Part shown: positions 26,155-36,150 of the stretch, in pieces
Numbering within the stretch: position 1 is the first letter of the stretch
Layout: each line of letters begins with the position of its first letter
Source: Asterias rubens
Lineage: Eukaryota
Direction of reading: 5' to 3'
Assembly (NCBI RefSeq): GCF_902459465.1
Contig: NC_047063.1
Location: 19,840,001-19,904,000, forward strand
Length of the DNA stretch: 64,000 nucleotides
The notes under the pieces: model-generated
What the model saw: only the letters and a program-made list of their open reading frames with translations
Database searches by the model: none
What the model was told of the DNA's origin: nothing
Made by a program: the position numbers and the translations under genes

Positions 26155-29100
26155 TTACAAGGAACTTGAAGTCGAAGAGGAGAGTCTGTTCTTCTTCATG
26201 TAGCGAGAATATGAGGTCAAAAGGTCATCCATCTTGTAGCCCTGCAATTGACAGTTGAAACAACTCTTGTTGTTGAAAAACATAATAACAATATCTTGTG
26301 CTGACAATTGCCTGTTTAATTTTTTTTACTGTATGCAGGCATTTGAATTACCTTTTTGGGATCGAATAAAGATTAACTGAATTGAACTGAATTTAAGTAC
26401 GGGTTTCATAAAAAAATTAAAATAAATCAACATCAGTCTGAAATCTCACTGGTTACAAAGTTCATACTACAAGCCACTGTTGCGTACTTCGATTGGTGCA
26501 ATTGAAATAAGCCAAAGTTAACATTTGATATTTTTTCACAGGTTGATCATACAGTGTTTTTTATTTAACCGGAAGCGGCATTTAATTAACTTTTCTGAAG
26601 AATTAGTAAAACTTACTTTCTCTTTAGATAAGTAGTTGTTGCTACGAAACTTCATGCAGTTTTTATATTATCAGTTGGATCTTAAATTTGATACAACAAT
26701 GCTAATTTTACCATTTTGGTTTTGAAGTGTAGTTTCATGGCTCCTGTCTTTTCATTTCCAACAGTAAGAATAAAGTCATCACTGTCCGAACCTGCCCAGC
26801 CCTGGATCTCATTATACGGGTAAGTCTTCAAGATATCCTACATCATAAAATAAAATAAACAGAGTCAATGTTTGTTGACTTTTTGTCTTCAAGAGAGTCT
26901 CTGAACTGAAAAGATGTAAACTTGCATCAGTATGTTTGTTTTGCTAAGACTTTTGGTTGTTCTTTGGGTCCTGGTTGTTTGGTCTTTCTCACTTTAAAAC
27001 ACTATTTCTGTGACCTGCCGGATAAAGTGTGGAACAGGTCTTTGCAAATGTGCAGCTAGTTCTTCCCTGTAATTGACATGCGATGTTGCAATTGAGAGGA
27101 GTCAATTGTGAGGGAATAACAACTATTAATTCAATTCAATACAATTCAGTTCTTTATTCAGCATGTCCAGCATGAAAATTACTTTCTCGATTTGCACATA
27201 CAGTTACTAAAAATAGCAGAAGAACCAAACCTGGACCGTAGAAATTAAAAGAGCAACAATATAACATAATTCAACCTATAATTGTTGATATACTATAATG
27301 ACTTTACCTTTGACTGGGCCTCGATGACGAGCACTCCTCGTTTGTTGATTGCAAGCAACACTCTCTCTGTGTTGTCAGATCTGATGACTTTCTGCAGACA
27401 ACATGTACATTTGGGTTTGAATTATGTTAAGGAGAATGGGCGAGAAAGTGTAGATTTGTGGATAGCCTACGAACCGAAGGCGAGAACATTGTTGTCACAA
27501 ATCTACATTTTTGAGTCTATTCTCTGACTTAAACTATTTCCCCAATCTTTTTGTACTTTGTCAAACGTTGTTTGGTTACATTGATAACTATTTTGCAAAT
27601 TTGTTGAGCATATATTATAGTGCTTGGAACATTATCAAGTACAACGTTTTTTTTTAGAATTATGTTATTTAATACTAAAGTAAATTGTTTAACTGAAACA
27701 ATAGTTTGGGGACATTGAAATATATCATGTTTTCATCAGCTGAGTTTTTCACCTGATGTTATTTTTTATGTTATTTTTGGAAAGACAGTCATTTTCAAGT
27801 TGAACTATCGCTGAAGTTTGTACATTCAACTGTAGATTCGTAAAAATAATCTACATTTTGAACAATAGAGTGACGTCACTGAAATAGTTTAATAGAAAAT
27901 AATATACTTCAAAATAGCTATTACTGACAGCTACTGAGTTCATGGTTAGGGCTAATACGTATTTGTTTCGATTAAGACTTACACAATCTAGTATCAGAGA
28001 GCATGAACTGCTGTCTCACCAAGAGAAACTTATATTTGTTTATTGTTTGTTTAGATGATCTTCTTTATTTAGATGATCAAGGGGATAAAGACACCAAGCT
28101 GGCAACAGCTTATCTTTCTCAATTAATATTGGTTGAATGTATAGATATCAATTGCACAAATCAAGAATTTAAATTTAGTATCTGGCAATGTTGCTGCACT
28201 TAGCTAGGTTTAAGAATTGCTGCTCTAAAATTGAAAAGGTCGTGGTTTCGAATCCCACTCGAGTAACATGCTTGTGATTTTGCTGAAGGAGCTCTGGAAA
28301 GTGTTGAGTGTATAGGTGCTAACACACATCGGTGTATATGGGTAAAACCAAAATTATATAAGAAGAAAAAAAAGACCTTTGTACCTCTGCTTCAAAGAAT
28401 GAGGAGCCAAACGTTGGCCATCGATACACAATCTTAAGGAATGCAATCTTAGCTCCCTCCTTGGACATAGCGGTCAGTGCAGGTTGGTTATACATGGATA
28501 CTATAGCCTGTTAATACAAATAAATATGTTGAGGTTGAAAACAAATAAACAAAAATTCTAACCTTGAGTCAGTGTTCTGACTATTCCCAGGTCAAAATTC
28601 CAGTTGAACCTAGTTAACTGGGGTCAACTGGTTCAACTGGATAGTGACCAAACTCGTCCATTTTCCATATTAACCAACTGGTTTGGACTAGGTTTAACTG
28701 TGTTCAACTGAGTTTAAATTATAAACCAGTTGGTGTCTGTCCATTTTCCATATTAAACCAACTGGTTTTAACTGTGTTTAACTAGTTTATCAACTGGTTT
28801 CAACTAGTTCCAGTTGAACCCAGTTTAACTAGGTTCAACTGGAATTTTGACCTGGGTTTGTATGTAAAATTGACAAGTGGCTGTATTTTGAGGTTGTATA
28901 GTTTCACAAGACAGGAGAGACTGGGAAAAGCTTGTGTCTGCCTGCTGTGAAGTCAACTGATGATGATGATGATGATAGTTTTATTTAACCTTTGCGAAAG
29001 CTTCTGCTGAAACTAACTACTTTTTGCTCTTTTTCATTTCGCATCTTCCACATTACTTCAAGGAATCGTCTCTTTACAATACATTTTTTAAACCATCCAC

Positions 29101-32100
29101 TCACTCTTTTCCAATCCTCCACAGACGCAGTTCTCAACATTTCTGTCGGCAGATATTCTGACAAGGTTTGAGCCAGATTCTGTAACTCTGATTTATCGTT
29201 GCCGTGTTGAGCACGAAACTGCAGGGCTGCCAACTTGACAGCATCCTCCCTCTGGCATCGATGGTAACCCCGAAGAAACTTGGGACGTTCCTGGTTGTAG
29301 TGGAATATTGTGTCAGCTTGTGGGTCCTCGCCCGGAACAACATCTGTCCAGATTTTCCGCAGGAAGTACATTTGGTAGGCAAGAACTGGCATATCACTTT
29401 CTGTTTTATGAGGGTAGGTGGAAGGGTTAAAATAACTGGGAACCAGTGGCAACAGACTGTAAACTGCATGGTATTTCGCCTCGTAACCTGTTTTAGCTAA
29501 GCAAAATTCGTCTGTGTTTGTCTGAGTTTTTGTGCTACTTAAGCAGAAAATATCACATTACTTTTGTTTTCTGCTTAGCAAACATGTGCAAGATACCAGT
29601 CAAAAAAATTGCTTGTTGTATGGTATTTTGGCTGGTTACCTTATCTGGGTAAGCATAATATTGCTGTCCTTAGCCAATTTTTAGCAAGCGTATGAAATTC
29701 CTGGAGGTTATTATGATCAAGATATTGTACCAGACATTATTCAAATCTAAATCTCAATGATGTACTCAGCAAAGAATGGAAAAAGCTTCTTGCCTTTGCT
29801 AAGCGGTTGATTGCAATAGATTGATCCAGTAGGCTCCGCCCACAATGCACGTGTGAGCAAGAACACATGGGACTCTCCAATGCCTTTCTGCACAACTCTG
29901 CCACGCGCGCCAAGCATACGCGCACGCATGTGGGACCTTAGTGTCGGACCTTCGTTGCGTTGTTATTGGTCAATACGCAATGGGGCGGAGCTTAATGGAT
30001 CGGTCTATTGCAGGCAGTTGTGGCTTATCTGTATCTATTAGCAGTATGTGTGCACTATTTGTGAGCTTGCAGATAAAATCAGAAGTGAATTTCTTCTAAG
30101 AGTAAAAAAGTTCACTAAACTCGATAGAATAAATAACTAAGTGGATTTGTGCTGAAACAAAATCTAATAACTAACCACAACTGTGACAACAGCGCAGAAG
30201 CTACATGTATACACTACTTTACTCAATCAACTGGAAGTGCTTTCTCGTCAAGACAAGTATCTAAATCCATACAGAGATAAGATAACTCAAAGAGGCCTAT
30301 TACTGCTACAAGAAGAGAGGCCAGCAAATGTGTCCAATGCATACCCTCACTTTTGGTTGACTTGATACCTTCCTCTTCCCAGTCGATCTGTCTCCTCAAG
30401 GCATCGAAGAAGAACTCGCTCTCGTCATGCAAGGCAACAACTGAATCCAAACAGAAGAGTGATGTGTTACACGAGCGCAGACAATCGGAAGTTATCAGGT
30501 TTGTGGATTATAAGATTTGTTTTTGAATCCAAGAATAATGCAGATATGATAATGTTTTAGATATGTTTCACTCCTAATCCAAGATTATCAATCCAGCAGC
30601 CGATTTCATGAAGCTTTACGCAACTGCGTAAGTCCACTTGCGCCACGCTTATGGCGCAACTTACGCCATAAACGTTGCGCAAGTGGACTTACGCAGCTGC
30701 GTAAATGTTAGTGAAATTGGCTGCAGATGAACTTATTTAATAATCAGGTTTGTGTTCAGATATGAATTTTGGTGTTCAAATATTTGTATCTGTATTCAAA
30801 CTCCAGTGAATCTGTATCCCGCTGGAGGGGAGTGTTGCAGACAAATTCTGCTTCTGTAATCTTAAACTGGTTGAGTTCAGGGAGACTTGGGGCCATGTCA
30901 CACTGGGCAATTGTTACGGGCAGCTTGGAGGTAGGATTTTTTGTCTTACATTACCCAACAAAATTATGTGCAAATTGAAACCATGCCATTTCTTCTGAGA
31001 GATTACTTGAAACCTGTTGCCTGTAAAGAGCCCTGTGTGAGACTTAAAGGTAGTGCAGTAATATTGGTCATTAAAAAAACACAAAAAATAAACAAACAAA
31101 CAAATAAACAAACAAACAAACCAATCCAACAACTTACTTTTTTGACTCATGATAAGGAACAGTCCGAATCCTTTTGTTGATTTGAGTCCAAGTCGACCAA
31201 TGATACTTCTGCATAACTCCCCAACAGTCATAGATGACGAGACCTGAAATGACTGGAAAGAGAAAACAAAGTATACAATGTCATTATCAGTTTCCTGAAA
31301 GTGCTCAAAATGTTTATATCCCATTACGCAAAGCAAAATATAAGATTATGAATCATTCATGAGTGATGCAAACAAAGCATACAGAAATGCAAATTAGCAG
31401 CTGATCAGTTGACTTTCTCTGTCTCCTTCTTTTGTAGTGCTACAGAAATTGGAACGCACTGTACAAAGTTTTGTTGCGTTTTCTATTCCCCTCCCAGTTA
31501 TTTCCTCAATATTCTAGCTCTGAGCCTCCAGTTCACCATTCTTTGCTCTAGTTCTGAACCTTCCCCCAACCCACCCTAGCAATTACAAAGTCATCTAGGA
31601 CTCGGTTACCTTGCTTCAGAATTATGAGGTACTGTTGTACGAGGTTTGTGTAGGACATTGTGAATTCAGGACATGAGAAGGGCAATCTTGCTGTTGTGGG
31701 CTGCGCAAGTCTTACATAGGGTACATGGTGCATTATTAATAATATCTTACCGCATTTGACTTATCATCAGGGAAGAACACAAAGTGAAAGATCTGAGTGA
31801 AGTTATGCTGTATGGTCTCTTTCTCCACCCAGTGCGGCGGATACTTGCGCTGTCGTGGACATTGAGCGATAGCATGCTGACGTCGTAAGCAGTCCTGGGC
31901 CAGCTTGTGACGAGCTGAACGAAGGAACTTAGTGATTTCTGGCTGTAGGATACGACTGCTGGTGAAGATACCAGTTGCTAGCCACATGAGCTCCCATCCT
32001 CGCTCCTCACTAACACTGCAAATCATCATCAGGTACAGTTGTTTTTTATCATACATTTAGTTTAATCAGTATTAGTGCAAACAGTTGTTTTTCTTGTTCA

Positions 32101-35930: not shown

Positions 35931-35987
35931 TTGTTTTGAAATTGTTTTCTAAACAAGGATGAAAAGGATGAAAAGTCATTCACTTAC

Positions 35988-36150
35988 CCAAAATGCCAGC
36001 ACCACAGAATTCTGTGTCAACTTTCTCCAAATTATTACCACTCCGTTGTTTTCGAGCCAGCTGCCTAAATCCCATCAAGTAAAGACTAGAAATAAACTAA
36101 ACTCCAAACACTTTTGAGAAAGTATTCCTTCCTTTATGGTTTCAAAAGTC
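35988..36150 (-). other. Probable 5'UTR exon of the MyTH4-FERM gene
   Basis: Strong donor TTGG|GTAAGT at 35988; upstream boundary unknown. Confidence 0.4.

What the first reader, a model, noticed from the sequence alone, without database searches (positions are those of the whole stretch)
26155..36150. Apparently headless myosin-VII tail gene: stand-alone MyTH4-FERM with a phospho-repeat N-terminus
Seen: the 630-aa product matches only the last MyTH4-FERM of myosin VIIa. Where the SH3, first MyTH4-FERM, IQ and motor regions should be there is an RS/SP repeat. Only about 7.5 kb of mostly repeats separates it from the same-strand THNSL1 stop (41726), and I found no motor or IQ exons there. The C-terminus [13 protein letters not shown] keeps a basic patch and ends in S-x-L, a class I PDZ-binding motif. 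Known: the myosin VII C-terminal tail mediates autoinhibition and binds harmonin-type scaffolds, and headless isoforms are described for Myo10. Inference: a duplicated tail acting as a motor-independent adaptor or trans-regulator in microvilli or cilia. Caveat: the frame is open from the acceptor at 34213, so a distant phase-2 coding exon is formally possible.
Basis: partly seen in the sequence, partly recalled or inferred. Interest (0 to 1): 0.75.

Follow-up and report, generated by a model that had tools for sequence, protein, structure and literature searches.

The report
Motor-less myosin-VII tail gene in starfish
Starfish carry a real, transcribed and conserved gene that encodes only the last cargo-binding module of myosin VII, preceded by a very basic serine/proline/arginine-rich tail; public annotation already lists it as 'myosin-VIIa-like', but no paper found here describes it.

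Summary
On the minus strand, 10 coding exons (34185..26155) encode 622, 628 or 630 aa, depending on three in-frame donors of exon 5. The 628-aa form is identical to the database protein named 'myosin-VIIa-like isoform X2' of Asterias rubens.

The protein is headless.
- RNA contigs from three runs join the acceptor at 34213 to a leader exon at 35988 to about 36270.
- That leader has in-frame stops, and two runs show no depth upstream of it.
- Full-length myosin VII proteins match only their final MyTH4-FERM (MF2) part in the window.
- Acanthaster planci and Patiria miniata have 616-624 aa orthologues. The A. planci gene has the same exon layout and the same upstream neighbour (THNSL1).

The gene keeps an AT-AC (U12-type) intron that is also present in amphioxus and abalone myosin VII. 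This points to a DNA-level partial duplication, since kept under purifying selection.

Function is inferred, not shown. The central FERM groove residues are kept. The peripheral harmonin-contact residues and the autoinhibitory RGSK motif are not, and the C-terminal S-x-L is not conserved. A motor-independent adaptor or decoy is the most likely role.

The scan also noted a second headless myosin-VII tail elsewhere in this genome (s1-178711).

The parts
35988..36268 (-). Non-coding leader exon (5'UTR). The 5' end is approximate, at 36223-36268. The donor GTAAGT starts at 35987. A TATA-like TATAATAAATA lies about 35 nt upstream of the longest contig end. The exon holds a uORF starting at ATG 36075.
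   Evidence: RNA contigs X12 rec.10, X10 rec.7 and X2 rec.17 join it to 34213. Depth is 0 at 36230-36629 in X10 and X12. There are stops in the main frame.
34214..35987 (-). Leader intron (GT-AG). It contains (TA)12.5 at 34217-34241, directly before the acceptor, and a perfect 170-bp x2 tandem duplication at 35591-35932.
33642..34213 (-). First coding exon. The start ATG is at 34185. It encodes the basic R/S/P-rich disordered N-terminus and the N-terminal extension plus the first helices of MyTH4.
   Evidence: the start region (M..VSR.S.H) is conserved in A. planci and Patiria; pLDDT is below 50 for most of residues 1-118
33920..34076 (-). Tandem array of a 30-nt unit, 5.2 copies, encoding [10 protein letters not shown] repeats.
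   Evidence: the orthologues have only 2-3 RSPSP motifs
32794..33641 (-). AT-AC U12-type intron inside the MyTH4 domain. Donor ATATCCTTT, branch TTCCCTTAAC, and an acceptor ending in AC.
   Evidence: The same intron is found in A. planci, in amphioxus canonical Myo7 and in Haliotis.
32637..32793 (-). Coding exon 2 (MyTH4). It is followed by a GC-AG intron with donor AG|GCAAGT.
   Evidence: the junction is confirmed by identity to P0152
31751..32015 (-). Coding exon 3 (MyTH4)
31138..31252 (-). Coding exon 4 (FERM F1 / RA_2)
30345..30440 (-). Coding exon 5, with three in-frame alternative donors. The exon ends at 30369, 30351 or 30345, giving 622, 628 or 630 aa. The variable residues lie in the F1 H2-S5 loop.
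   Evidence: The short and long forms are annotated in A. planci; the middle form is annotated in A. rubens and Patiria.
29105..29400 (-). Coding exon 6 (FERM F2)
28385..28507 (-). Coding exon 7 (end of F2, start of F3)
27308..27391 (-). Coding exon 8 (F3)
26712..26837 (-). Coding exon 9 (F3). It holds the degenerate RGSK position, which reads TGAMK.
26155..26241 (-). Last coding exon. It holds the GYKMDD motif, the C-terminal helix and the stop codon. The extent of the 3'UTR was not determined.
41726..42076 (-). Last coding exon of the upstream neighbour THNSL1. This is context, not part of the gene.
   Evidence: same neighbour and same strand in A. planci

Best explanation
This is a stand-alone starfish gene, listed in public databases as 'myosin-VIIa-like'. 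Its product has no motor, neck, first MyTH4-FERM or SH3. It consists of a roughly 117-residue disordered, extremely basic Ser/Pro/Arg-rich N-terminus followed by one complete MyTH4-FERM supramodule of the myosin-VII C-terminal (MF2) type.

Origin. It arose by DNA-level duplication of the 3' part of a myosin-VII gene, because it keeps that gene's AT-AC U12 intron. The duplication predates the split of the Asterias and Acanthaster/Patiria lineages. Since then the gene has acquired its own promoter, leader exon and first coding exon, and has stayed under purifying selection.

Inferred function. It is a motor-independent adaptor or decoy. The retained central FERM groove binds C-terminal peptides of scaffold or cargo proteins. 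The altered peripheral surfaces imply a changed partner range. The many Ser/Thr-Pro sites in the basic N-terminus would provide phospho-regulated attachment or localisation. It is unlikely to act by mimicking tail-on-head autoinhibition.

Shown: gene structure, transcription start, headlessness, conservation and fold. Inferred: binding partners, regulation and cell biology.
For: - Identity with database protein P0152 and orthologues of 616-624 aa.
- RNA contigs join 34213 to the leader exon 35988 to about 36270. Nothing is seen upstream, and the leader has in-frame stops.
- No motor, IQ, MF1 or SH3 match in the window or in the A. planci locus.
- THNSL1-to-gene order is conserved, with only 3.6 kb between them in A. 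planci.
- The coding-exon layout is identical and the AT-AC intron is conserved in A. planci. The same intron is found in amphioxus and Haliotis Myo7.
- Synonymous sites are saturated (pS 0.78) while pN is 0.17 in the MF part.
- PDB sequence match to MYO7A MF2 at E 9e-145. AlphaFold model with a disordered N-terminus. Foldseek TM 0.88-0.90 to 5mv9/5xbf.
- Groove residues equivalent to MYO7A R2024, Y2026 and K2189 are kept, and L2186 is M/L.
Against: - No binding, localisation or tissue data exist.
- The positions equivalent to K2118 and G1982, whose deafness mutations weaken harmonin PDZ3c binding, are E/A/A and S/N/S in the three starfish proteins, and the G2163 region has an indel. The canonical partner may therefore not bind.
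- The 5' end rests on assembled contigs, not on capped-end data.
- The canonical starfish Myo7 could not be fetched, so the date and donor of the duplication are unresolved. The tree is unresolved at the base, and AU tests reject neither an ambulacrarian placement (p 0.24) nor G1+G2 as one clade (p 0.16).
Confidence: 0.85

Rival explanations
1. It acts as a competitive decoy in the strict sense. It competes with full-length myosin VII for MF2 cargo and so negatively regulates it, as proposed for headless Myo10. This is one of the two roles left open in the best explanation.
For: The central FERM groove residues used by MF2 to bind the harmonin C-terminal motif are retained. Headless Myo10 is the known precedent.
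Against: Peripheral PDZ3-contact positions are changed. The stem branch is long (0.72), which suggests new specificity rather than simple competition. There are no expression or interaction data.
Confidence: 0.25
2. It is a trans-acting inhibitor of the myosin VII motor that mimics the tail-on-head autoinhibited state.
For: MF2 is the part of MYO7A that mediates autoinhibition (PMC12402077). The second basic residue of the motif (K) is kept, and A. planci and Patiria have K-G-x-M-K.
Against: The RGSK motif reads TGAMK in A. rubens, with an inserted residue in all three starfish proteins. The motif is [RK]-G-x-[KR] in 14 of the 15 other sequences compared; the 15th has a gap there.
Confidence: 0.08
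3. It is the 3' end of a longer myosin (or other) gene whose upstream coding exons were missed, or the locus is mis-assembled.
For: The frame is open from the acceptor at 34213 to the ATG.
Against: The exon spliced to 34213 has in-frame stops. RNA depth is zero upstream of it in two runs. The start codon region is conserved in three genera. The gene order is the same in an independent assembly of A. planci. No myosin head matches were found.
Confidence: 0.03
4. It is an annotation artefact or a decaying duplicate, like the roughly 435-aa 'myosin-VIIa' entries in many other animals.
For: Such short entries are common. The amphioxus one is a gene model split at the U12 intron, lying directly after a 1736-aa head-containing model.
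Against: This gene starts upstream of that intron, with its own coding exon and leader. It is transcribed, has an intact frame in three genera, and shows pN far below pS.
Confidence: 0.02

Closest known systems
C-terminal MyTH4-FERM (MF2) of class VII myosins (human MYO7A / MYO7B; PDB 5MV9, 5MV7, 5MV8, 5XBF)
   Same: Same domain order and fold: N-terminal extension, MyTH4, then F1-F3. 40-45% identity and TM 0.88-0.90. Same AT-AC intron position in invertebrate Myo7 genes. Groove residues R2024, Y2026 and K2189 are retained.
   Different: It is not attached to a motor, neck, MF1 or SH3. The K2118 and G1982 positions and the RGSK motif are changed. The C-terminal helix is shorter. A basic R/S/P-rich N-terminus takes the place of the rest of the myosin.
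Headless Myo10
   Same: A MyTH4-FERM-bearing tail expressed without the motor.
   Different: This rests partly on my own knowledge: headless Myo10 is an isoform from an internal promoter of the Myo10 gene and keeps the PH domains. Here a separate duplicated gene lies beside an unrelated neighbour (THNSL1) and has no PH domains.
PLEKHH1/2/3 and MAX-1, non-motor MyTH4-FERM proteins (from my own knowledge; not examined here)
   Same: Stand-alone genes encoding a MyTH4-FERM module without a motor.
   Different: Those carry PH domains and are not nested among myosin-VII MF2 sequences. This protein has no PH domain, and its best matches are all myosin-VII MF2.
Second starfish headless myosin-VII tail (P0191, 674 aa, Asterias rubens and A. 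amurensis; scan note s1-178711)
   Same: Also a single MF2 with a non-myosin N-terminus. It also lacks the RGSK motif, which reads MGTQ.
   Different: It has an acidic N-terminus and is far closer to canonical Myo7: 62% identity to vertebrate MYO7A, against 47-48% between canonical myosin VII and the A. planci orthologue of this gene. It was found only in Asterias, so it is a separate, younger duplication.

Membership tests
Class VII myosin | Myosin motor (head) domain | tested here: not met
   No tblastn match to residues 1 to about 1600 of three full-length myosin VII proteins, beyond chance hits and weak secondary MF1-like alignments to the same MF exons, in the 64-kb window or in the A. 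planci locus. The transcript starts at a non-coding leader exon. The precomputed Pfam list has no Myosin_head.
Class VII myosin | IQ neck, first MyTH4-FERM and SH3 before the second MyTH4-FERM | tested here: not met
   There is only one MyTH4-FERM. Homology begins right after the position of the SH3, at HTLEHF.
MyTH4-FERM supramodule | Contiguous MyTH4 domain plus three-lobed FERM folding as one unit | tested here: met
   Pfam finds MyTH4, RA_2 and FERM_M. The AlphaFold2 model has 240 residues at pLDDT 90 or more, nearly all in the core. Foldseek gives TM 0.86-0.90 to four Myo7 MF2 structures.
Myosin-VII MF2 subtype | Closer to MF2 than to MF1, Myo10 or Dictyostelium MF | tested here: met
   487 bits to MYO7A MF2, against 113 to MYO7A MF1 and 41 to Myo10. 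MF2 and MF1 are separated with 100/100 support in the tree.
Harmonin-binding MF2 | Residues shown to be needed for harmonin PDZ3c binding (PMC5493754) | tested here: inconclusive
   R2024, Y2026 and K2189 are kept and L2186 is M/L. K2118 is E/A/A, G1982 is S/N/S, and the G2163 region has an indel. Binding itself was not tested.
Autoinhibitory myosin-VII tail | RGSK motif in F3 (PMC12402077) | tested here: not met
   A. rubens has TGAMK and the other two starfish have KG[VA]MK, all with one extra residue. Of the 15 other non-G2 sequences aligned, 14 have [RK]-G-x-[KR] and one has a gap there.
Headless isoform of a motor gene (Myo10 type) | Produced from an internal promoter of a gene that also encodes the motor | tested here: not met
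   The next same-strand gene upstream is THNSL1, in both A. rubens and A. planci. No motor exons were found.
PLEKHH-type non-motor MyTH4-FERM proteins | PH domains N-terminal to the MyTH4-FERM | tested here: not met
   No PH domain in Pfam scans of the exons or in the precomputed domain list.
SR proteins | RRM domain plus RS domain | tested here: not met
   There is only RS/SP-rich composition, with 15 RS/SR dipeptides, and no RRM.
Class I PDZ-binding C-terminus | S/T at -2 and a hydrophobic last residue, conserved among orthologues | tested here: not met
   A. rubens ends SSL, but A. planci ends KLL and Patiria ends KTL.
U12-type (AT-AC) intron | Donor ATATCCTT, branch TCCTTAAC about 10 nt before an AC acceptor, and an exact in-frame junction | tested here: met
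   The sequence signals are present in A. rubens, A. planci, amphioxus and Haliotis. The junction reproduces the database protein.

The most novel reading that the evidence does not exclude
Starfish have made motor-less myosin-VII tails at least twice, in an old lineage and in an Asterias-only lineage, and both copies lost the RGSK head-docking motif. The old copy then evolved a new partner surface and a polybasic, multiply phosphorylatable SP/RS tail. That tail resembles the SPKK-type basic repeats of echinoderm sperm histones (from my own knowledge). This would make the protein a phospho-switchable linker between FERM cargo and an acidic polymer such as microtubules, membrane or nucleic acid, rather than a myosin accessory.
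Probability: 0.2. Interest if true: 0.55.

Novelty: new variant of a known kind. Interest (0 to 1): 0.4.

Why it matters
It gives a clean natural example of a myosin tail released from its motor as an independent, long-lived gene. It has a built-in comparison: two independent headless copies, both without the head-docking RGSK motif. That comparison can help separate the cargo-binding and autoinhibitory roles of MF2.

It also has a practical use. Many roughly 435-aa 'myosin-VIIa' entries in databases begin at this same point. The amphioxus one is shown here to be a gene model broken at a conserved AT-AC intron, and the abalone one starts at the same AT-AC acceptor. Such entries should therefore not be counted as headless myosins.

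Tried and rejected
- The look-up of sequencing runs was busy at first and worked on retry.
- The look-up of encoding contigs found nothing for the shorter A. planci isoform P0003. The longer isoform worked.
- I could not fetch a canonical full-length starfish or sea-urchin myosin VII. The length window of the search for homologous proteins excludes proteins of about 2100 aa for these queries, and a long query would be swamped by vertebrate hits. The donor and date of the duplication therefore stay open.
- A literature search for the Drosophila residues R2140/K2143 gave only unrelated papers. I used the RGSK motif from PMC12402077 instead.
- A search for MYO7A as a minor-intron gene gave nothing useful.
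- Automatic exon mapping of the amphioxus and Haliotis models failed at small exons, so only the U12 intron was compared.
- dN/dS could not be given as a number for the whole protein, because synonymous sites are saturated.
- The tblastn hit of Myo7 residues 1601-1711 reaching into the RS repeat was judged partly spurious. Clear similarity begins at HTLEHF.
- Rejected readings: 3' end of a longer gene, mis-assembly, annotation split and pseudogene (see the rival explanations).

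
Full report
**What is there**

The stretch 26155-34213 on the minus strand holds open blocks that Pfam recognises as MyTH4, RA_2 (FERM F1) and FERM_M. I joined them by splice signals into 10 coding exons: 34185-33642, 32793-32637, 32015-31751, 31252-31138, 30440-30369, 29400-29105, 28507-28385, 27391-27308, 26837-26712 and 26241-26155. 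This gives 622 aa.

Exon 5 has two further in-frame donors, 18 and 24 nt downstream, giving 628 and 630 aa. The 628-aa form is letter for letter the database protein P0152, named 'myosin-VIIa-like isoform X2 [Asterias rubens]'.

Intron 1 is an AT-AC U12-type intron, with donor ATATCCTTT, branch TTCCCTTAAC and an acceptor ending in AC. Intron 2 uses a GC donor.

**Is it headless?**

Four lines of evidence say yes.

- RNA contigs. I laid contigs of four runs on 33630-39629. In two runs of the same species label (X10, X12) and one of a relative (X2), single contigs join exon 1 to a second block starting at 35988. The block reaches at least 36146 (X12), 36223 (X10) and 36268 (X2). The eight contig letters between the two blocks fit 34206-34213, so the join is 34213/35988, and the minus strand reads GTAAGT from 35987. 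Depth in X10 is about 217 over the leader and 264-496 over exon 1. It is 8-19 in the unique parts of the intron, and zero at 36230-36629 in X10 and X12.
- Stops in the leader. The spliced leader has several stops in the frame of the ATG at 34185. The last is 18 codons upstream of it.
- No head exons. tblastn with three full-length myosin VII proteins (2061-2155 aa) finds only their final quarter in the window. Apart from weak secondary alignments of their MF1 part to the same exons, nothing better than chance matches the motor, IQ or SH3 regions anywhere in the 64 kb.
- Orthologues. Acanthaster planci (616 and 624 aa; XP_022081416, XP_022081415) and Patiria miniata (624 aa) have orthologues starting with the same M..VSR.S.H motif. 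In the A. planci genome the gene has the same 10 coding exons, and seven of the ten have identical lengths. It has the same AT-AC intron. It also has the same same-strand upstream neighbour, a SKI/Thr_synth_N/PALP protein (THNSL1), only 3.6 kb away. The A. rubens neighbour is confirmed as THNSL1. This also rules out a mis-join.

**What the protein is**

From residue 118 or so (HTLEHF...) to the end, the protein aligns with the C-terminal MyTH4-FERM (MF2) of human MYO7A at E 9e-145. It aligns with MYO7B at about 1e-124, with MYO7A MF1 at only 1.6e-31, and with Myo10 at about 1e-9.

An AlphaFold2 model built on a 20-sequence alignment has pLDDT below 50 for nearly all of residues 1-118 and a confident MF core. 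Foldseek places the model on the four Myo7 MF2 crystal structures with target-normalised TM 0.86-0.90.

Residues 1-117 have a pI of 12, 30 R+K against 2 D+E, 16 Ser/Thr-Pro sites and six RSPSP motifs. Five of these come from a 30-nt tandem array at 33920-34076. The orthologues share the basic S/P-rich character and two or three RSPSP motifs, but not the array.

**Origin**

The AT-AC intron sits at the same codon position, just before KYMGD, in the canonical amphioxus myosin VII gene. A matching U12-type branch site and AC acceptor precede KYMGD in Haliotis. The starfish gene therefore inherited it, which points to duplication of genomic DNA rather than retroposition.

The same look-up showed that the 437-aa amphioxus 'unconventional myosin-VIIa' entry is a model split at this intron. 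A 1736-aa model with the head ends about 500 nt before it. The many roughly 430-440-aa entries that begin at KYMGD may have the same cause; this was shown for amphioxus only. They should not be read as headless genes.

In a tree of 35 MF2 and 5 MF1 sequences, the three starfish proteins form a clade (100/99) on a long stem (0.72) whose position at the base of MF2 is unresolved. AU tests do not reject placing it with the other ambulacrarian sequences (p 0.24) or with the second starfish paralogue (p 0.16).

That second paralogue (P0191, 674 aa, acidic N-terminus) was found only in Asterias. It is 62% identical to vertebrate MYO7A, so it is a separate and younger headless copy. It probably corresponds to the scan's note s1-178711.

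Between A. rubens and A. planci, synonymous sites are saturated (pS 0.78). Non-synonymous difference is 0.17 in the MF part and 0.35 in the N-terminus. The gene has been kept by selection.

**How it may work**

Everything in this section is inferred. Numbering of MYO7A residues uses the 5mv9 chain index plus 1688. This offset assumes the chain ends at residue 2215, the length of human MYO7A as I recall it. It places every residue named in the two papers on the expected letter.

- Groove residues. Yu et al. [quoted passage not shown] They also showed that R1921E-F1923V and L2083W in Myo7b abolish binding. The equivalent positions here (MYO7A R2024, Y2026, L2186, plus K2189) are R, Y, M/L and K.
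- Surface residues. The same paper found that the deafness mutants K2118N, G1982E/R and G2163S weaken binding. K2118 is E/A/A in the three starfish proteins, against K or R in all 17 other sequences aligned. G1982 is S/N/S. The G2163 region carries an indel. The alternative exon-5 donors add 6 or 8 residues in the F1 H2-S5 loop that holds G1982.
- Autoinhibition motif. The RGSK motif, needed for tail-mediated autoinhibition of MYO7A (PMC12402077), is [RK]-G-x-[KR] in 14 of the 15 other sequences compared; the 15th has a gap there. It reads TGAMK in A. rubens, KG[VA]MK in the other two starfish, and MGTQ in the second headless paralogue.

I therefore favour a motor-independent adaptor or decoy that still takes peptides in its groove but has a shifted partner range, with a phospho-regulated basic tail. 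I consider mimicry of autoinhibition unlikely. The S-x-L ending is not conserved (KLL, KTL), so it is weak evidence for PDZ binding.

**Novelty**

Full-text searches found 'headless' together with MyTH4-FERM almost only for Myo10. No listed paper concerned a headless myosin-VII gene. The gene itself is annotated in three starfish, and a second copy in two. It is a new variant of a known kind (motor-less MyTH4-FERM proteins), of moderate interest.

**Limits**

- The 5' end rests on assembled contigs.
- The reads tool was used once and could not also cover exon 5 or the U12 junction.
- The canonical starfish myosin VII was not retrieved.
- No functional data exist.

Noticed in passing
L002:9450-10001 (amphioxus) and L003:9960-10001 (Haliotis): The roughly 430-440-aa 'myosin-VIIa' database entries begin exactly after a conserved AT-AC U12 intron. 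In amphioxus, a 1736-aa head-containing model ends just before it, so these entries are split gene models and not headless genes.
   Followed up: partly
window 36075-35988 joined to 34213-34188, minus strand: The leader carries a 39-codon upstream ORF. Its stop (TAA, 34190-34188) lies one base before the main ATG at 34185, a layout that could allow termination-reinitiation.
   Followed up: no
window 35591-35932: A perfect (100%) tandem duplication of a 170-bp unit inside the leader intron. It looks very recent.
   Followed up: no
window 34630-35229, 37230-38229, 38430-39429: High-copy repeat families with summed contig depths up to millions in all four RNA runs. Copies of the same element also occur near 8503-8826 and 40541-40828. 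They look like abundant transcribed SINE/MITE-like elements.
   Followed up: no
window 34214-34265: The used acceptor at 34213 is preceded not by a normal pyrimidine tract but by C10-A8-(TA)12-CAG. The reads tool skipped this stretch as a repeat.
   Followed up: partly
window 32636 (intron 2 donor): A. rubens uses a GC donor (AG|GCAAGT), where A. planci has a normal GT donor at the same junction.
   Followed up: yes
window 43832-45271, minus strand: A 480-codon open block with a reverse-transcriptase domain (RVT_1) lies between exons of THNSL1. It is probably a LINE-type insertion in an intron.
   Followed up: partly
protein P0191 (other piece of this genome; scan note s1-178711): A second headless myosin-VII tail, 674 aa with an acidic N-terminus, found in A. 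rubens and A. amurensis only. It is 62% identical to vertebrate MYO7A MF2, and its RGSK motif is replaced by MGTQ.
   Followed up: partly
protein P0020 (Polypterus, named MYO7A): In the MF2 tree this protein groups with the MYO7B sequences (100/100), so its database name may be wrong.
   Followed up: no
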